From NCBI GenBank assembly GCA_900088475.1, contig FLMG01000350.1, positions 62,001 to 126,000 of the forward strand: a stretch of 64,000 nucleotides of DNA, given 5' to 3'. The position numbers were made by a program, and so were the translations under genes. The stretch comes from Hyphochytrium catenoides. Lineage: Eukaryota; Protista; Hyphochytriomycota. Below, piece after piece: positions 47,327-54,589 of this stretch (within the stretch, counting starts at the first letter, position 1; each line of letters starts with the position of its first letter). The notes beneath the pieces were generated by a model. The model did not search any database and was not told the origin of the DNA. It saw only the letters and a program-made list of their open reading frames with translations.

Positions 47327-48925
47327 ATGACGTGGGACCAAGGACCAGCAGTCCGTCGAATAAGGCGAACACTAGACCATATCAGGGATTCCAACAATGC
47401 TTTGCCAAGCTCTCCAACAGATCTCAAACAGGAACTCACCTCTGCCGGCCAGCCAGAAACTGATATGTCTTCTAGCGACTACCAGTACACACTGTCTAAT
47501 GTAGGTTGTGCTCTTCATTCTGTTAGTAGTGAGGTGTCGGCTAAATTGCAAGGGCTGCCACTTTCCTGACCAGGGCATTCTGACTCCAGACCAGCGAGAG
47601 TTCTATGAAGTGAACGGGTTTTTAGGTATTGACTTCTAGAGAATACCCTCCACAGCGAAGGAAGAATGACGCTGACCTTTGCTCTTCTCAAACAGTCATT
47701 AAGGGTCTGATCGATAGCGAAGAGCTTGATATCTACAAAAACCGATTTAGGGACATCTGTGGTAAGTGCAGAGGCAGGGCCAAAGTGGCCTATAAATGTT
47801 CTGATGTTGGGCTCCTTTTTCCTCCTTAGACAAGAAGGTGGAGGTGCCTCCCAGTATGACTGTCATGCGGGACATCGCACTGGCCAAAAGTGGCAAGCGT
47901 CAGGAAGGAGAGCGTGCCATCACAAAGGTTCAGGTAGGAGCAATATTCTCACTGTGTGACCTAGGTTGTTGCTTACTTCACTCCAAGGACTTTCAAGATG
48001 AAGAAGTCCTTTTCAAGTATTGTCAAAATAAAAGGTTGCTGGAGGTTGCCAAAGCTATTGTGGGACCTAACATCAAGTCAGTGCACACCATGCTGATCAA
48101 CAAGCCGCCAGATCTAGGTATATAAACGACCGTCTTTTGATATACAAGCCGCCTTTGTTGACCGTACCATACCTCGTAGGTGCCCTCACGTCTCGCCATC
48201 CACCGCATCAGGATCTCTATTATTTTCCTTTCCGACCGGCCAATCGAATTTGTGCCGCATGGACTGCGATGGAAAAAATTGACGAGCTCAATGGCGGTCT
48301 TTACGTGCAACCGGGGAGCCACAAAGGATCCCTTTTGCCGCACACGTAGGTGAACTGGGCTTGTCTCTCCCATGAGAATCAATCACTGAAGTGGCTGCTT
48401 GCAGATATCCGGACTGGGAAGGTGGTGTGAACAAAGCGTACCATGGGATACAAAATCTGCCTAAAGAAACACGCTTTATCAACCTCCGCATGGAAGCAGG
48501 CGACACCGTCTTCTTCCACCCTCTTCTGGTTCATGGGTATGTGACCTGACCTGCAGGATACAGGGGCGACCAATACTGGCCAGCTAATTATCTCTATATA
48601 ATTTCTTTTAGGTCGGGGCCCAATCTTACAACCCGCTTTCGCAAAGCTATTAGTGTCCACTTGTCACCAGCCGATCCGGAGTTTATTGATGTGACAGGGA
48701 CGGTGCAGGTAGGTTGCTCAAATGGACCACATACCTCTGTAGAAGTGCTTAGACAATGATGTGGTGTACGCGCAGGAGGAAATCGCTAAGGAGGTCGAGG
48801 ATATGTTCAAAGCCAGGTCCAAGAAGTTATTTGGGCAGGAACTCCACATGGATTTCATTGACGTCTGGAAGAACAAGTCTCGCTTGGTGATGGGAAGCGA
48901 AACGTCAAGTGGCGCTCAAGTTTGA
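47327..48925 (+). CDS. PHYH: Phytanoyl-CoA dioxygenase (peroxisomal, PTS2), multi-exon
   Basis: ITKVQDFQDEE; [10 protein letters not shown]; [14 protein letters not shown] (HxD); [15 protein letters not shown]; [11 protein letters not shown]; RKAISVH; N-terminal RIRRTLDHI. Confidence 0.93.
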
Positions 48926-50545: not shown

Positions 50546-53500
50546 ATGGAAGAAGGTCCCACTAAAGTGGACAGCCTGGTGCTCTACGGAGCGACGGCGC
50601 TCTCCTCCCTTCTCTCAACAGTGGGCTGCCTCTTCATCATCATCCGGTACATTTGGGCCCGCGGTCTTCCATCTGCGGATGTCAGCAAGGATCTTGTCTT
50701 TGTCTTGGCTATCTTCGTAAGCAGCCAAATTGCTGTTGTACTCGGTTTCTTTCGTCGTAAACTTACTCCTTTCTTTGTTGTTACAGGATCTCCTCGCTTC
50801 CCTCGCCTTCCTGTTAGGACAGCTGCCCACCGAGCACTTCTGGAATCAATTTTTTTCTGGTCCAAGTCCCGGTACCCTCTGCACTGTCCAAGGGATATTT
50901 ATTCAGTTTTTTGCATTGGCGAGCATCTTCTGGAATGCCCTCATGGCATACATGCTGTACCGCTTTGTCGTTAGGTGGGAGAAGCATGAAAACATCCGCT
51001 TGAAAGTGTTGTTGCTAGGAGTCGCTGTCATTTGTGTATGTGCTGTGTATACAGTCATCGCCGTCGAGCAGAGCCTTTTTGGCGATGCCACTCTCTGGTG
51101 CTGGATCTCTCAGGAACATAAGGAATGGCAATACATTCTCTTCTATGGCTGGGTCATTCTATGCTGGCTCTTCAGCTGTGCTGCGATCTATGTCGTACGG
51201 AGGAACATAAGGCGTAGGATCGGACGGCAACAGAATTTGGAAGCTTTAGACACAGCCCAAATGGTTGAGAGTAGGATAAGTCTTTATGTACTGACCTACA
51301 TTCTGCTCTGGTTCCCTGCGCTTGTCAACCGAACTACCCAGTATTTTTATGGCTATGTCTTCTGGACCATGCTCCTCCAGGCCATGACCGCGCCTCTTAA
51401 CGGATTCGTCGACGCGGTTATTTATAGTGGAGTCTGGGAGACGCCCATGAAGTTCTTTGCTAGGTTAAAGTCGACAGTGGTCTGCTGTGGGAGACCTGGA
51501 CAGCAAGGCCCATCCAACAGGAAAAGGACCATTCAGGGAGGCGGTGCAGCTTGTAACCCCTCACATCTTCTTCCTGCACACATTCTAGAAGAGCAACGAA
51601 CCGGTATAACGTGAGCTTTGACACTTGAACCATAAGCTTGTAACATTCTCTTGTTGACTATCTAGGCCAAGCGTCGATGCACCTAGTCACCTTTAATATG
51701 AACATGGGCCAGATTCCTCGTAATCTGCACTCCATGCTTCCTCTTGGCTACGATCTTTACGTTGTCGCAATCCAGCAGGCGACTCAGCCGCAGGAATTTG
51801 CCAAGCGCCTGCTGGTAGGACTCTCCCCGATAGCTTGACGGCCAGACGTTGACGCACTACTCTCTTTTCATGGTAATAGGATCACCTGAACCTGGGCTGT
51901 CAAACGGCTTCAGACTCGGCAAAAGGCCCTTACACAATAGTTTATCGAGAGGCCAGTAACTCGTTTGGTGGTAACTGCTTTACAGCACTGATGGTCTTTG
52001 CCTCGCAACAAGCGGTAAGAGGTGGATTTCGTCCCTCCCGCATCAAGTAGAACCTTCGCGGAATGTATTTCCCGAAGCTCAGGGTCAGCTTTTCATATCC
52101 ATAACTAATTTCATCTGTTCTCGATAGGCGGAGGCAGATGTCTTTTTCTGTCCTGGAGAACAGCATGCCTCACGTCTTGGCAGCCTTCTTTCCGGTGCTC
52201 CCCGGGCCTCAGTAGGCATCTGCTTCAGATACTTTGACGCTTGGTTTGCGGTCCTAACAACGTCATTAACTTGGGACTCAAGGTGATTTCCTAATAACGT
52301 CTCTGCCAAGGACCTGGGAGGCTCTCGATTAACTTTATATGGGGCGCTGTTAGCTCCACCTCTGTAGCACCTTTTTTTATCAAGCTTCTGCGGTTCTCTT
52401 TTCCCCGTCTGATCTGACGTTATTCTCACCGAACCGGTACCTGCTTATTAGGGACGGAACTTCTCGCAAGGAGCAGCGCATTCGGGATCTCCACAAGCTG
52501 ATTAAAGAAGCTCACATGACGCCAGAGGAAGTAGGCTTTGACTTCTCCCTGCTTTATCATCACACTATCATCCTGGGAGACCTCAACTTCATTCTCGAGC
52601 CCACCTATCACGACCCGGACATCTTGCAGACTCTACACGAAGCGGTGGTAGCCGAGCGTCAGTGGAGAGCACTGGAGCATTTGCTAAGCCGTGTAGCACA
52701 GCGAGGGGCTGCGATCAACCCTTCTGTCGTTTCGGAGACAAGAAACAGTATTATCAACGTTGATAACATTTCCACAGCCGCAAAGTTCGCTTTTGAGACT
52801 GTCCAGTCGCCGGACTTGGAGAAGGCAGACACGTCACTTAGAGATATTTATGACGAAGAGGACGATGCACCCTTAGGGCAAGAGGCTGCAGAATGGCAGA
52901 TCTGGACGCCACCTATAGGGGGATTTAGCTTCCCTCAGCTCTTAGAGGATTCTCTACGTGCGCTAACCGAGCGAGAAAATCTGTGGGACCGGCTTGTTGC
53001 CTGTGATCAACTGCAATACCTTAAGGGAAAGGGAGACGTTCTCTCAGGCTTCATGGAGGTATGATCTCACCTTGCTCGCTGGTATTGTGATGCTTCTTGG
53101 TCTAGCTAGATCTTGCCCTACGTAAGCTTCTAGTTTGCGCTTTTGCATGGCCTCTACTGGACGTCAAGTCTGCACTTCTTTTCGCGTGATGATGGTTTGT
53201 CGACTTTTGGAGTCCTCTATTCCTATAGCCTGTTGACGCACTGCATTACTAGATGCCCATCAGGTTTCCGCCAACCTATCGCTATCGCGTGGGACACCAT
53301 CGAAAGCTACTAGAGGCCAAAGCAAAGTTAGATATGCGTAAGACGTTAAACTGCAGAGTGGGTGCTATTCACCGGCCACCGTACTACGCGGACCGGATTC
53401 TATTCAAAAGCATGGCAGTGCGGAAGGAGGGCCTCAAGCTGAATAGCTACAGCTTGGTGGAGTCGGTCACAACATCGGACCATAAGCCCGTCGTTTGTTC

Positions 53501-54589
53501 CTTATCGTTTGAGGTGGATCGGCTCTACCGGCCATTGGAGCAAACGCGTGAGTTAAAGCGAATGGAAGACATGAAGAACGTCTATAAGTTCAAGGTCCAT
53601 TTGAAGGATGTGGCTTTGTTTTTGTTTAAGTCGACAAAGTAAGTACAACGCCGTCGCTGCTCTTCCTCTACCACGCGTCTTTTGATTCTGTCGCTTCCTC
53701 TGACTTTCCCTTTTTCTTTTCAAAGTGTCTGTTCTGTTGCCACCTCCCCCAAGTGCTCTTGTTTATATTGTCAACCCGTTACTGCTCTCTTTTCACCAGC
53801 TAGCTTTATTGCATCTTCCCAGGTCTAACGTCGTTTCAATATTCAGGAATATTTATGCTCTGCGGGGCCCAAACGCTTCTATGAAGCTTGATAGACGCCG
53901 ATCATCTCTAGGGTCCGACGTGGACTCTATTCTGGTCAGAGAGAATGAGAGTACTACGGTCTCGTCGGCAGTGGAGGGGTCGCTCCAAGCAGATTCTGAA
54001 CTGGGGCTATCAGACGAGGCGGTATGTCTAGTTTGCTGCTTCTCTCGCCCTAATCGATCCTCTTACGAGCTTGGGGGCCTCTTGTTACTATTAGGCGTAC
54101 CACACTGAGCAGCTGGCTTCCAACCTTATGTCCAGTGTCCGATCCTTTTTGATAAATGGAGCTGCTACTGGACCCTTCCCAGAGGGCTACAGCATAGACC
54201 GGGTCGTCGCCTTCTTCCCCATTCCTTGTGAGGACATCTTCGCAGTTCACCGCAAGCTCTACGAGGTAGTTGGGGTCTTGGACAGAGGATGGACTGGTGG
54301 GACAGGAACAAAGGAGGTGACAAAGAAGACCTTCCGCTGGGAAGAGGTCATGCGCTCGGGCATTCATTGTGAGGCGCATAATACCAGTCAGCAGAAGGGG
54401 ATGCATATGCTCTTGCGCTTTGAGGACAGCTCAGGAAACGACTTGGGGCAGTGCGTTTTTGCCGTAGTATCTCCCTATGGGAATGCTAAGCTCTTTGGCA
54501 CTGACCATAGTACGGTGAAGGCAGATGTTTCCCTCTGTGGGCAGACAATAGGGACCGCCAGTTTTGGGATTACGGTGGAATGCACTTAG
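50546..54589 (+). CDS. cAMP-receptor-like 7TM receptor fused to a degenerate inositol polyphosphate 5-phosphatase and a C2-like domain (GPCR-INPP)
   Basis: 7TM: LCTVQGIFIQFFALASIFWN, GDATLWCWI, LWFPALVNR, PLNGFVDAVIY. Phosphatase: VTFNM, YDLYVVAIQQ, ILGDLNF, DQL, FPPTYRY, PYYADRILF, SDHKPV. The parts join in frame through short introns (e.g. about 51604-51665). Confidence 0.85.

What the first reader, a model, noticed from the sequence alone, without database searches (positions are those of the whole stretch)
51666..52600. The receptor's 5-phosphatase domain looks catalytically dead (receptor pseudophosphatase)
Seen against the known 5-phosphatase consensus: GxQE becomes AIQQ (metal Glu lost, about 51773-51778); GNKGAV becomes GAPRASV; vNsHL becomes LTTSL (His lost, about 52260); GDLNYR becomes GDLNFI (Arg lost). 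PPTYRY, DRIL and SDHKPV remain, and there is an acidic insertion of about 130 aa. Inference: a phosphoinositide-binding or scaffold pseudoenzyme under 7TM control, a signalling design I have not seen described.
Basis: partly seen in the sequence, partly recalled or inferred. Interest (0 to 1): 0.75.

Follow-up and report, generated by a model that had tools for sequence, protein, structure and literature searches.

The report
Receptor-fused inositol phosphatase with degenerate active site
A stramenopile gene joins a seven-helix membrane receptor to a SHIP-like lipid phosphatase, a fusion already described in oomycetes, but this copy has lost several residues that are the same in about 100 relatives, so it probably no longer works as a normal phosphatase.

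Summary
A nine-exon gene (50546-54589, + strand, all GT-AG, 1037 codons) encodes three parts. These are a cAMP-receptor-type 7TM domain, a SHIP-like inositol 5-phosphatase domain, and a SHIP-type C2 domain.

Aligned exon by exon to about 100 relatives, the window has Q for the Mg-binding Glu (E in 100/100). It has S for a 5-phosphate-binding His (102/103) and I for the Arg of GDLNYR (105/106). It has P-R for the 1-phosphate-binding Asn-Lys (101/101 each). It keeps GDLN, PPTYRY, DRIL and SDHKPV.

Decay is confined to the phosphatase domain. The window keeps 9/9 family-invariant positions in the 7TM part and 11/11 in the C2 part. It keeps only 10/30 and 23/30 in the two halves of the phosphatase.

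No alternative exon, second allele or second receptor-phosphatase gene was found in the genome.

The architecture is not new. It is the published "GPCR-INPP bigram" of oomycetes (van den Hoogen 2018). What I did not find described is a member with a degenerate active site.

Loss of activity is inferred from sequence and has not been measured. The same stretch was noted once before in this scan (s1-347929), on the same DNA. I rate it a new variant of a known kind, of moderate interest.

The parts
50546..51603 (+). Exons 1-2 (50546-50716, 50787-51603): 7TM receptor domain of the Dictyostelium cAMP-receptor type, plus a linker of about 60 aa
   Evidence: Pfam Dicty_CAR E=3e-9 on exon 2. The family profile matches exon 2 at 153.8 bits and exon 1 weakly. 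The window keeps 9/9 family-invariant positions.
51666..53531 (+). Inositol 5-phosphatase (Exo_endo_phos2, SHIP-like) domain. It is spread over exons 3 (51666-51814), 4 (51880-52014), 5 (52128-52282), 6 (52452-53058) and the first part of exon 7 (53253-)
   Evidence: Pfam PF22669 E=1e-10 on exon 7 and 0.06 on exon 6. The family profile matches exons 3, 5, 6 and 7 in colinear order. Exon 7 aligns to SHIP2 residues ISFPPTYRY...SDHSPV. Exon 4 has no significant similarity left.
51776..51778 (+). CAG = Gln at the position of the Mg2+-binding Glu (Synj1 E591)
   Evidence: Relatives have E in 100/100. The role of E591 is taken from PMC7781601.
51701..51703 (+). AAC = Asn where the family has Gly or Ala. 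This is the position of the second Mg ligand of INPP5B (N275), which is Gly in SHIP2
   Evidence: family G 78, A 19; window N. The role is taken from PMC5550278.
52200..52208 (+). CCC CGG GCC = Pro-Arg-Ala where relatives have Asn-Lys-Gly, the 1-phosphate ligands (SHIP2 N540/K541, Synj1 N668/K669)
   Evidence: Relatives have N 101/101 and K 101/101. The alignment is shown. Roles come from PMC5550278 and PMC7781601.
52263..52265 (+). TCA = Ser where relatives have the His of the xCHL motif, a 5-phosphate ligand (Synj1 H689)
   Evidence: Relatives have H in 102/103. The role comes from PMC7781601.
52579..52593 (+). GDLNFI. The catalytic base Asp (52579) and the Asn (52585) are kept. Tyr becomes Phe (52588) and Arg becomes Ile (52591; Synj1 R734, a 5-phosphate ligand)
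   Evidence: Relatives have D 106/106, N 106/106 and R 105/106.
52594..52983 (+). Acidic insertion of 130 aa (net charge -14) between GDLNFI and the conserved W-x-x-L-x-x-D-x-L helix
   Evidence: Relatives carry insertions of variable length at the same site.
53268..53492 (+). Retained C-terminal motifs: PPTYRY (Tyr 53277), the 4-phosphate Arg (53373), ADRIL (Asp 53391) and SDHKPV (Asp 53478, His 53481)
53577..54589 (+). SHIP-type C2 domain. Its first strand lies in the tail of exon 7 (to 53638), exon 8 (53823-54021) is a Ser-rich linker, and exon 9 (54095-54589, including the stop) holds the rest
   Evidence: The family profile matches exon 9 at 51.3 bits, and the window keeps 11/11 invariant positions. 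The AlphaFold model of 54197-54586 has pLDDT 77. Its best structural matches are the C2 domains of SHIP1 (Z 8.5, rmsd 2.6, 94 aligned) and SHIP2 (Z 8.3). These stand less than 1 Z above other C2 domains.

Best explanation
This is the genome's single member of the GPCR-INPP bigram family. It is a cAMP-receptor-type 7TM receptor whose cytosolic tail carries a SHIP-like 5-phosphatase domain followed by a C2 domain. In this lineage the phosphatase domain has lost the Mg-binding Glu, two of the five ligands of the scissile 5-phosphate (His, Arg) and the Asn-Lys pair that holds the 1-phosphate. I therefore conclude that it no longer performs efficient canonical Mg-dependent 5-dephosphorylation. The receptor and C2 parts remain under family-typical constraint. 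The protein is therefore most likely still used as a receptor, with a non-catalytic, membrane-apposed phosphatase-C2 module. Shown: the architecture, family membership, the substitutions and their uniqueness, and the domain-specific decay. Inferred: the loss of activity. Speculative: what the dead module does, for example docking on the inner leaflet, binding a headgroup weakly, or holding a partner.
For: Architecture and family. Pfam finds Dicty_CAR and Exo_endo_phos2 on separate exons. The nearest database proteins are oomycete and brown-alga proteins with the same two domains; one is named 'GPCR-INPP 2'. A profile of six relatives matches seven of the nine exons in colinear order.

Substitutions. 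In 109 relatives the counts are E 100/100, N 101/101, K 101/101, H 102/103 and R 105/106. The window has Q, P, R, S and I at these positions.

Residue roles. In Synj1, N543/E591 sit at the Mg2+, N668/K669 hold the 1-phosphate, and H689, N732, R734, Y784 and H859 surround the 5-phosphate. Removing Mg2+ lowers kcat/KM by four orders of magnitude, and mutation of the residues equivalent to H689 lowers activity (PMC7781601). In SHIP2, N540/K541 bind P1 (PMC5550278).

Domain-specific decay. The window keeps 9/9 positions that are at least 90% conserved in the 7TM part and 11/11 in the C2 part. It keeps 23/30 in the phosphatase C-half and 10/30 in the N-half. Exon 4 is no longer recognisable. The window's terminal branch ranks 3rd longest of 98 in a tree of the phosphatase C-half, against 16th of 85 in the 7TM tree.

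An intact gene. It has 1037 codons without a stop, and all eight introns are GT-AG with matching phases.

No rescue. No other reading-frame piece in the 64 kb window matches the family profile, and there is no second copy or haplotig in the genome.
Against: No activity was measured, and no structure of the whole domain could be modelled here. The general base Asp, its partner Asn, the DRIL Asp, the SDH Asp-His pair, the 4-phosphate Tyr and Arg, and the first Asn are all retained. Gln can still ligate a metal. The window has also gained an Asn at the site of the second Mg ligand of INPP5B, where SHIP2 and the family have Gly or Ala, so the metal site may be rebuilt rather than lost. Lys to Arg keeps the positive charge. 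No orthologue closer than about 41% identity exists in the databases, so I cannot tell whether the substitutions are old and maintained. There is no transcript evidence for the gene model or for expression.
Confidence: 0.65

Rival explanations
1. The domain is still an enzyme with a remodelled site. A Gln plus the newly gained Asn hold the metal, and Arg replaces Lys. The protein then works as a slower phosphatase, or one with a different substrate, under receptor control.
For: The base Asp/Asn pair, the DRIL Asp and the SDH Asp-His pair are retained. G is replaced by N at the INPP5B N275 position, and K by R is a conservative change. Other members of the wider endonuclease/exonuclease/phosphatase superfamily do without a His at the xHL position; APE1 has Tyr there (my own knowledge, not tested here).
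Against: Five positions that are fixed in about 100 relatives changed together. The N-terminal half of the domain keeps only 10 of 30 invariant positions, and one exon is unrecognisable. Two of the five 5-phosphate ligands and the only carboxylate metal ligand are gone.
Confidence: 0.2
2. The gene as a whole is decaying or silent, a young pseudogene, and the active-site changes are neutral drift.
For: The phosphatase branch is long. There is no expression evidence and no orthologue for a selection test.
Against: The reading frame is open over 1037 codons and nine exons, with eight consistent GT-AG introns. All 20 family-invariant positions of the 7TM and C2 parts are kept, which neutral drift would not spare while it erased half of those in the phosphatase.
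Confidence: 0.1
3. It is an artefact. Either the exon choice is wrong, or an alternative or mutually exclusive exon, or a second allele, carries the canonical residues.
For: The model is ab initio. The published genome that this assembly probably represents is a heterozygous diploid (PMC5795050).
Against: The substituted codons lie well inside exons that align colinearly with the family. The profile search of every reading-frame piece of at least 10 aa on both strands of the 64 kb window found no second match. The 2.1 kb stretch is single-copy in the assembly. Each substitution needs one to three base changes, so sequencing error is not an explanation.
Confidence: 0.05

Closest known systems
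GPCR-INPP bigrams of oomycetes and Nannochloropsis (van den Hoogen et al. 2018, mBio, PMC5784254; PLoS Pathog, PMC6033456)
   Same: It has the same three-part layout: an N-terminal cAMP-receptor-like 7TM domain, a cytosolic inositol polyphosphate 5-phosphatase domain, and a conserved C-terminal domain with the FPxPxEDIF and LGQxV motifs. The best database matches are these proteins, from Saprolegnia, Aphanomyces, Pythium, Phytophthora, Globisporangium and Ectocarpus.
   Different: Relatives keep every catalytic and substrate-binding residue, whereas the window has replaced five. It is the only copy in its genome, against one to nine in oomycetes. It has eight introns and is at most about 34% identical to any relative.
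SHIP1/SHIP2 phosphatase-C2 module (PDB 5OKM, 6IBD; Le Coq et al. 2017, PMC5550278)
   Same: These are the nearest solved structures for the family's phosphatase domain and for the window's C-terminal domain (Z 8.3-8.5). As in SHIP2, the family has Gly rather than Asn at the second metal-ligand position.
   Different: There is no SH2 domain or proline-rich tail; a 7TM receptor replaces them. The active site is degenerate. There is a 130 aa acidic insertion after GDLNFI.
Pseudophosphatases attached to or paired with signalling proteins: inactive myotubularins (MTMR5/9/13), the D2 domains of receptor tyrosine phosphatases, and IA-2/PTPRN (my own knowledge, not tested here)
   Same: The phosphatase fold is kept while catalytic residues are lost, within a signalling protein. 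An active paralogue is present in the same genome (C3687).
   Different: Those belong to the Cys-based PTP superfamily, whereas this is a Mg-dependent endonuclease/exonuclease/phosphatase fold. The searched literature describes no inactive inositol 5-phosphatase domain.

Membership tests
GPCR-INPP bigram | N-terminal 7TM GPCR-like domain | tested here: met
   Dicty_CAR E=3e-9 and 7tm_2 E=2e-5 on exon 2. The family profile scores 153.8 bits. The window keeps 9/9 invariant positions.
GPCR-INPP bigram | Inositol polyphosphate 5-phosphatase domain C-terminal to the receptor in the same protein | tested here: met
   PF22669 on exons 6-7. Colinear profile matches cover exons 1-3, 5-7 and 9, with consistent splice phases. 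That these form one transcript is inferred, not shown.
GPCR-INPP bigram | Family-specific C-terminal (C2) domain with the FPLPxEDIF motif | tested here: met
   Exon 9 matches profile positions 768-886 and keeps 11/11 invariant positions. It adopts a C2 fold.
GPCR-INPP bigram | Accessory domain predicted to be catalytic (full residue set) | tested here: not met
   E to Q, N-K to P-R, H to S and R to I, at positions that are fixed in 100-105 relatives.
Active inositol polyphosphate 5-phosphatase | Mg2+-binding Glu of the GxQE motif | tested here: not met
   Gln at 51776-51778.
Active inositol polyphosphate 5-phosphatase | Motif WxGDxN(Y/F)R | tested here: not met
   The window reads LGDLNFI. Asp and Asn are kept but Arg is replaced by Ile.
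Active inositol polyphosphate 5-phosphatase | Motif P(A/S)W(C/T)DR(I/V)L and the SDH Asp-His pair | tested here: met
   PPYYADRIL and SDHKPV are present, and the Asp, Arg, Asp and His are kept.
Active inositol polyphosphate 5-phosphatase | 5-phosphate hydrolysis in vitro | not testable with these tools
   This needs a protein assay.
Pseudophosphatase (as a concept) | Fold retained, catalytic residues lost, no activity | tested here: inconclusive
   The residues are lost. The fold of the whole domain was not modelled, because the spliced sequence was not to be joined. Activity is untested.
SHIP (SH2-containing inositol phosphatase) | Phosphatase domain followed by a C2 domain | tested here: met
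SHIP (SH2-containing inositol phosphatase) | N-terminal SH2 domain | tested here: not met
   The N-terminus is a 7TM receptor, and Pfam finds no SH2 domain.

The most novel reading that the evidence does not exclude
The only receptor-phosphatase bigram of this organism signals without catalysis. The 7TM domain would control a dead phosphatase-C2 module that reads or shields inner-leaflet phosphoinositides. Alternatively, the module would recruit and regulate the soluble PH-domain SHIP-like 5-phosphatase encoded elsewhere in the genome, in the way inactive myotubularins pair with active ones. That would show that GPCR-bigrams have a scaffold function independent of the enzyme activity for which they were named.
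Probability: 0.15. Interest if true: 0.7.

Novelty: new variant of a known kind. Interest (0 to 1): 0.45.

Why it matters
GPCR-bigrams were proposed to let a receptor switch an attached enzyme on directly, bypassing G-proteins, but nobody has shown what the attached domains do (PMC5784254). A natural member has an active site that has decayed while its receptor and C2 domains stay fully conserved, and it is the only copy in its genome. This suggests that the module has a role beyond catalysis. It also offers a ready-made 'catalysis-dead' comparison for experiments on oomycete pathogens. It would be the first inactive domain of the Mg-dependent inositol 5-phosphatase family that I could find described.

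Tried and rejected
1. Pairwise searches of the short exons 3, 5 and 6 against solved structures gave nothing useful. Only exon 7 matched SHIP2. The family profile was needed instead.

2. MAFFT --addfragments placed parts of exon 2 and exon 8 wrongly, so I replaced it with hmmsearch and hmmalign against the family profile.

3. The whole-library search with exon 7 found no orthologue closer than 41% identity, and not the window's own protein. Conservation of the substitutions in orthologues, and dN/dS, could therefore not be tested.

4. I looked for a second, intact receptor-phosphatase gene. Five other 5-phosphatase loci in the genome have no 7TM match nearby. The closest (C3687) has PH-like segments upstream and canonical residues.

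5. I looked for a haplotig and found none.

6. I recalled OCRL R500 as the GDLNYR Arg. When I worked through the numbering, it is the Arg of CDRIL, so I dropped that argument.

7. The first alignment for the C2 model (A1) mis-set the first 30 residues, so I used a shorter first sequence (A2).

8. The retained pocket residues (7 of 12) are kept at about the same rate as the rest of the domain (33 of 60). Their retention therefore does not argue for a preserved binding pocket.

Full report
**What is there**

The region is part of a spliced eukaryotic gene on the + strand. Reading the three frames and the sequence gives nine exons:

- exon 1: 50546-50716
- exon 2: 50787-51603
- exon 3: 51666-51814
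- exon 4: 51880-52014
- exon 5: 52128-52282
- exon 6: 52452-53058
- exon 7: 53253-53638
- exon 8: 53823-54021
- exon 9: 54095-54589

All eight introns (62-194 bases) are GT-AG and the phases match. The sum is 3114 bases, or 1037 codons plus the stop.

I never joined the exons into one protein. So there was no search, Pfam scan or structure prediction of the spliced protein or of the whole phosphatase domain. The contig is not human.

**Family**

Pfam finds a Dictyostelium cAMP-receptor type 7TM domain on exon 2 (E=3e-9). It finds the C-terminal third of the inositol 5-phosphatase fold (PF22669) on exon 7 (E=1e-10), with a weak trace on exon 6.

A search of 1.8 billion representative proteins with exon 7 returned no close orthologue; the best hit was 41% identical. 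Several full-length proteins of 650-1050 aa did appear, and they carry both Dicty_CAR and PF22669. They come from Saprolegnia, Globisporangium, Phytophthora, Ectocarpus and unnamed eukaryotic contigs.

A word-based search with the closest of them (P0032) gave more than 90 further members, nearly all from oomycetes. One is labelled 'GPCR-INPP 2'. Animal SHIP1/SHIP2 were the next-best group.

This is the GPCR-INPP class of 'GPCR-bigrams', described by van den Hoogen et al. in 2018 for oomycetes and Nannochloropsis (PMC5784254 and PMC6033456).

A profile built from six full-length relatives matches the window's exons 1, 2, 3, 5, 6, 7 and 9 in colinear order. It matches nothing else in the 64 kb window on either strand.

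**The active site**

I aligned 109 relatives and the separate exon peptides to that profile. The residue roles come from two papers:

- the substrate-bound synaptojanin-1 structure (PMC7781601)
- the SHIP2 phosphatase-C2 paper (PMC5550278)

Positions where the window differs from the family:

| Role (reference residue) | Relatives | Window | Coordinates |
|---|---|---|---|
| Mg2+-binding Glu (Synj1 E591) | E 100/100 | Gln | 51776 |
| 1-phosphate Asn-Lys (Synj1 N668/K669, SHIP2 N540/K541) | N 101/101, K 101/101 | Pro-Arg | 52200-52205 |
| 5-phosphate His (Synj1 H689) | H 102/103 | Ser | 52263 |
| Arg of GDLNYR (Synj1 R734) | R 105/106 | Ile | 52591 |
| Tyr before that Arg | Y 101, F 5 | Phe | 52588 |

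Positions that the window keeps:

- the first Asn of TFN
- the general base Asp and its Asn (GDLN)
- the Tyr of PPTY
- the 4-phosphate Arg
- the Asp-Arg of DRIL
- the Asp-His of SDH

Two further facts bear on activity. Removal of Mg2+ lowers Synj1 kcat/KM by four orders of magnitude. Mutation of residues equivalent to H689 lowers activity in other 5-phosphatases.

One nuance runs the other way. At the position of the second metal ligand of INPP5B (N275), SHIP2 and the family have Gly or Ala, but the window has gained an Asn (51701).

**Where the decay is**

I counted columns that are at least 90% conserved in the family, and how many the window keeps.

| Part | Conserved columns kept by the window |
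|---|---|
| 7TM domain | 9 of 9 |
| C-terminal (C2) domain | 11 of 11 |
| Phosphatase, C-terminal half | 23 of 30 |
| Phosphatase, N-terminal half | 10 of 30 |

Typical family members keep all of them (median 1.00). Exon 4 occupies the right place and has the right length. However, its similarity to the family consensus is no better than that of shuffled sequence.

In quick trees, the window's terminal branch is the third longest of 98 for the phosphatase C-half. It is only the sixteenth longest of 85 for the receptor domain. These are short alignments with midpoint rooting, so the trees are supportive only.

This pattern fits relaxed constraint on catalysis in a protein that is otherwise still under selection. 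It does not fit a dying gene.

**Possible rescues**

- No alternative exon exists in the window.
- The stretch is single-copy in the 61 Mb assembly.
- Neither the receptor exon nor exon 7 has a close paralogue.
- Five other 5-phosphatase loci lack a 7TM match nearby.
- One of them, on contig C3687, belongs to the same SHIP-like subfamily. It has all canonical residues and PH-like segments upstream. The organism therefore keeps active 5-phosphatases.

**The C-terminal domain**

The relatives' closest solved structures are the SHIP2 and SHIP1 phosphatase-C2 modules, and their tails align weakly to the SHIP2 C2 domain.

An AlphaFold model of window 54197-54586, made with a 38-row family alignment, has mean pLDDT 77. 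Foldseek ranks SHIP2 and SHIP1 first, but weakly. VIA-align gives Z 8.5 for SHIP1 (rmsd 2.6, 94 residues aligned) and Z 8.3 for SHIP2. Ferlin and other C2 domains follow at Z 7.6 and below. The fold is therefore a C2 domain, and the SHIP preference is within the noise of one Z unit.

By comparison with SHIP2, the first strand of this C2 domain lies in the tail of exon 7. Exon 8 is a Ser-rich linker.

**How it most likely works**

Shown: a 7TM receptor carries a cytosolic SHIP-like phosphatase-C2 module that must sit against the inner leaflet.

Inferred (about 0.65): the module cannot carry out efficient canonical 5-dephosphorylation. It lacks the only carboxylate metal ligand, two of the five ligands of the scissile phosphate, and the 1-phosphate clamp.

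Speculative: the module is retained as a membrane-docking, weak headgroup-binding or partner-holding element under receptor control.

Rivals:

- a remodelled but still active site (0.2)
- a silent, decaying gene (0.1)
- a model or assembly artefact (0.05)

**Known and new**

My full-text searches found no report of a GPCR-INPP, or of any inositol 5-phosphatase domain, with a degenerate active site. That is a limited library, so absence there is weak evidence.

Within my sample of 109 relatives, only two show a single deviation each: P0095 has H to N and P0111 has R to L, and the latter looks truncated. None shows several.

**Organism**

The assembly has 4759 records and 61 Mb. The published Hyphochytrium catenoides assembly has 4758 scaffolds plus a mitochondrial genome, 65.7 Mb, and introns of about 208 bases (PMC5795050). 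That identification is an inference from numbers only; I did not verify it by sequence.

**Limits**

- There are no transcripts, no assay, no orthologues and no model of the whole domain.
- The Asn-to-Pro assignment depends on a two-residue gap in a loop. On any alignment, though, the loop contains no Asn-Lys pair.

Noticed in passing
G000 contig C3687, about 83680-86500 (locus L023:1683-4502, minus strand): This is a soluble paralogue of the same SHIP-like 5-phosphatase subfamily, with every canonical residue (WNMGE, GVQEC, SNKGAV, CHL, GDLNYR, FPPTFRR, PSYTDRILW). Upstream reading-frame pieces look like PH domains. It could be the active partner or the source lineage of the receptor's domain.
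   Followed up: partly
relatives P0009/P0037 (Ectocarpus fasciculatus), P0032 (metagenome contig L026) and others: GPCR-INPP proteins occur in a brown alga and in several unnamed eukaryotic metagenome or transcriptome contigs. That is wider than the published distribution (oomycetes and Nannochloropsis only). The whole family carries a SHIP-type C2 domain after the phosphatase, and the passages of the 2018 papers that I read do not mention it.
   Followed up: partly
window 47838-48349, + strand: Reading-frame pieces upstream of the receptor gene read like a phytanoyl-CoA dioxygenase-type enzyme (HTMLINKPP..., ...[14 protein letters not shown]). I named this from memory of the motif and ran no search.
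   Followed up: no
protein P0001: The top hit of exon 7 in the representative library (E=1e-13) is a 5745 aa protein from a Candidatus Omnitrophota metagenome bin. It matches only residues 63-108 of exon 7, in two stretches. This is unexplained; it may be a repeat that resembles the strand just before SDH.
   Followed up: no
whole assembly G000: The record count (4759) and the intron statistics fit the published Hyphochytrium catenoides assembly (4758 scaffolds plus the mitochondrion). The window's own protein is absent from both protein libraries.
   Followed up: partly
relatives P0095 (Bremia lactucae) and P0111 (Phytophthora aleatoria): These are the only single deviations at catalytic positions among 109 relatives: His to Asn in P0095 and Arg to Leu in P0111. 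P0111 lacks the rest of the domain, so it may be a gene-model error.
   Followed up: no
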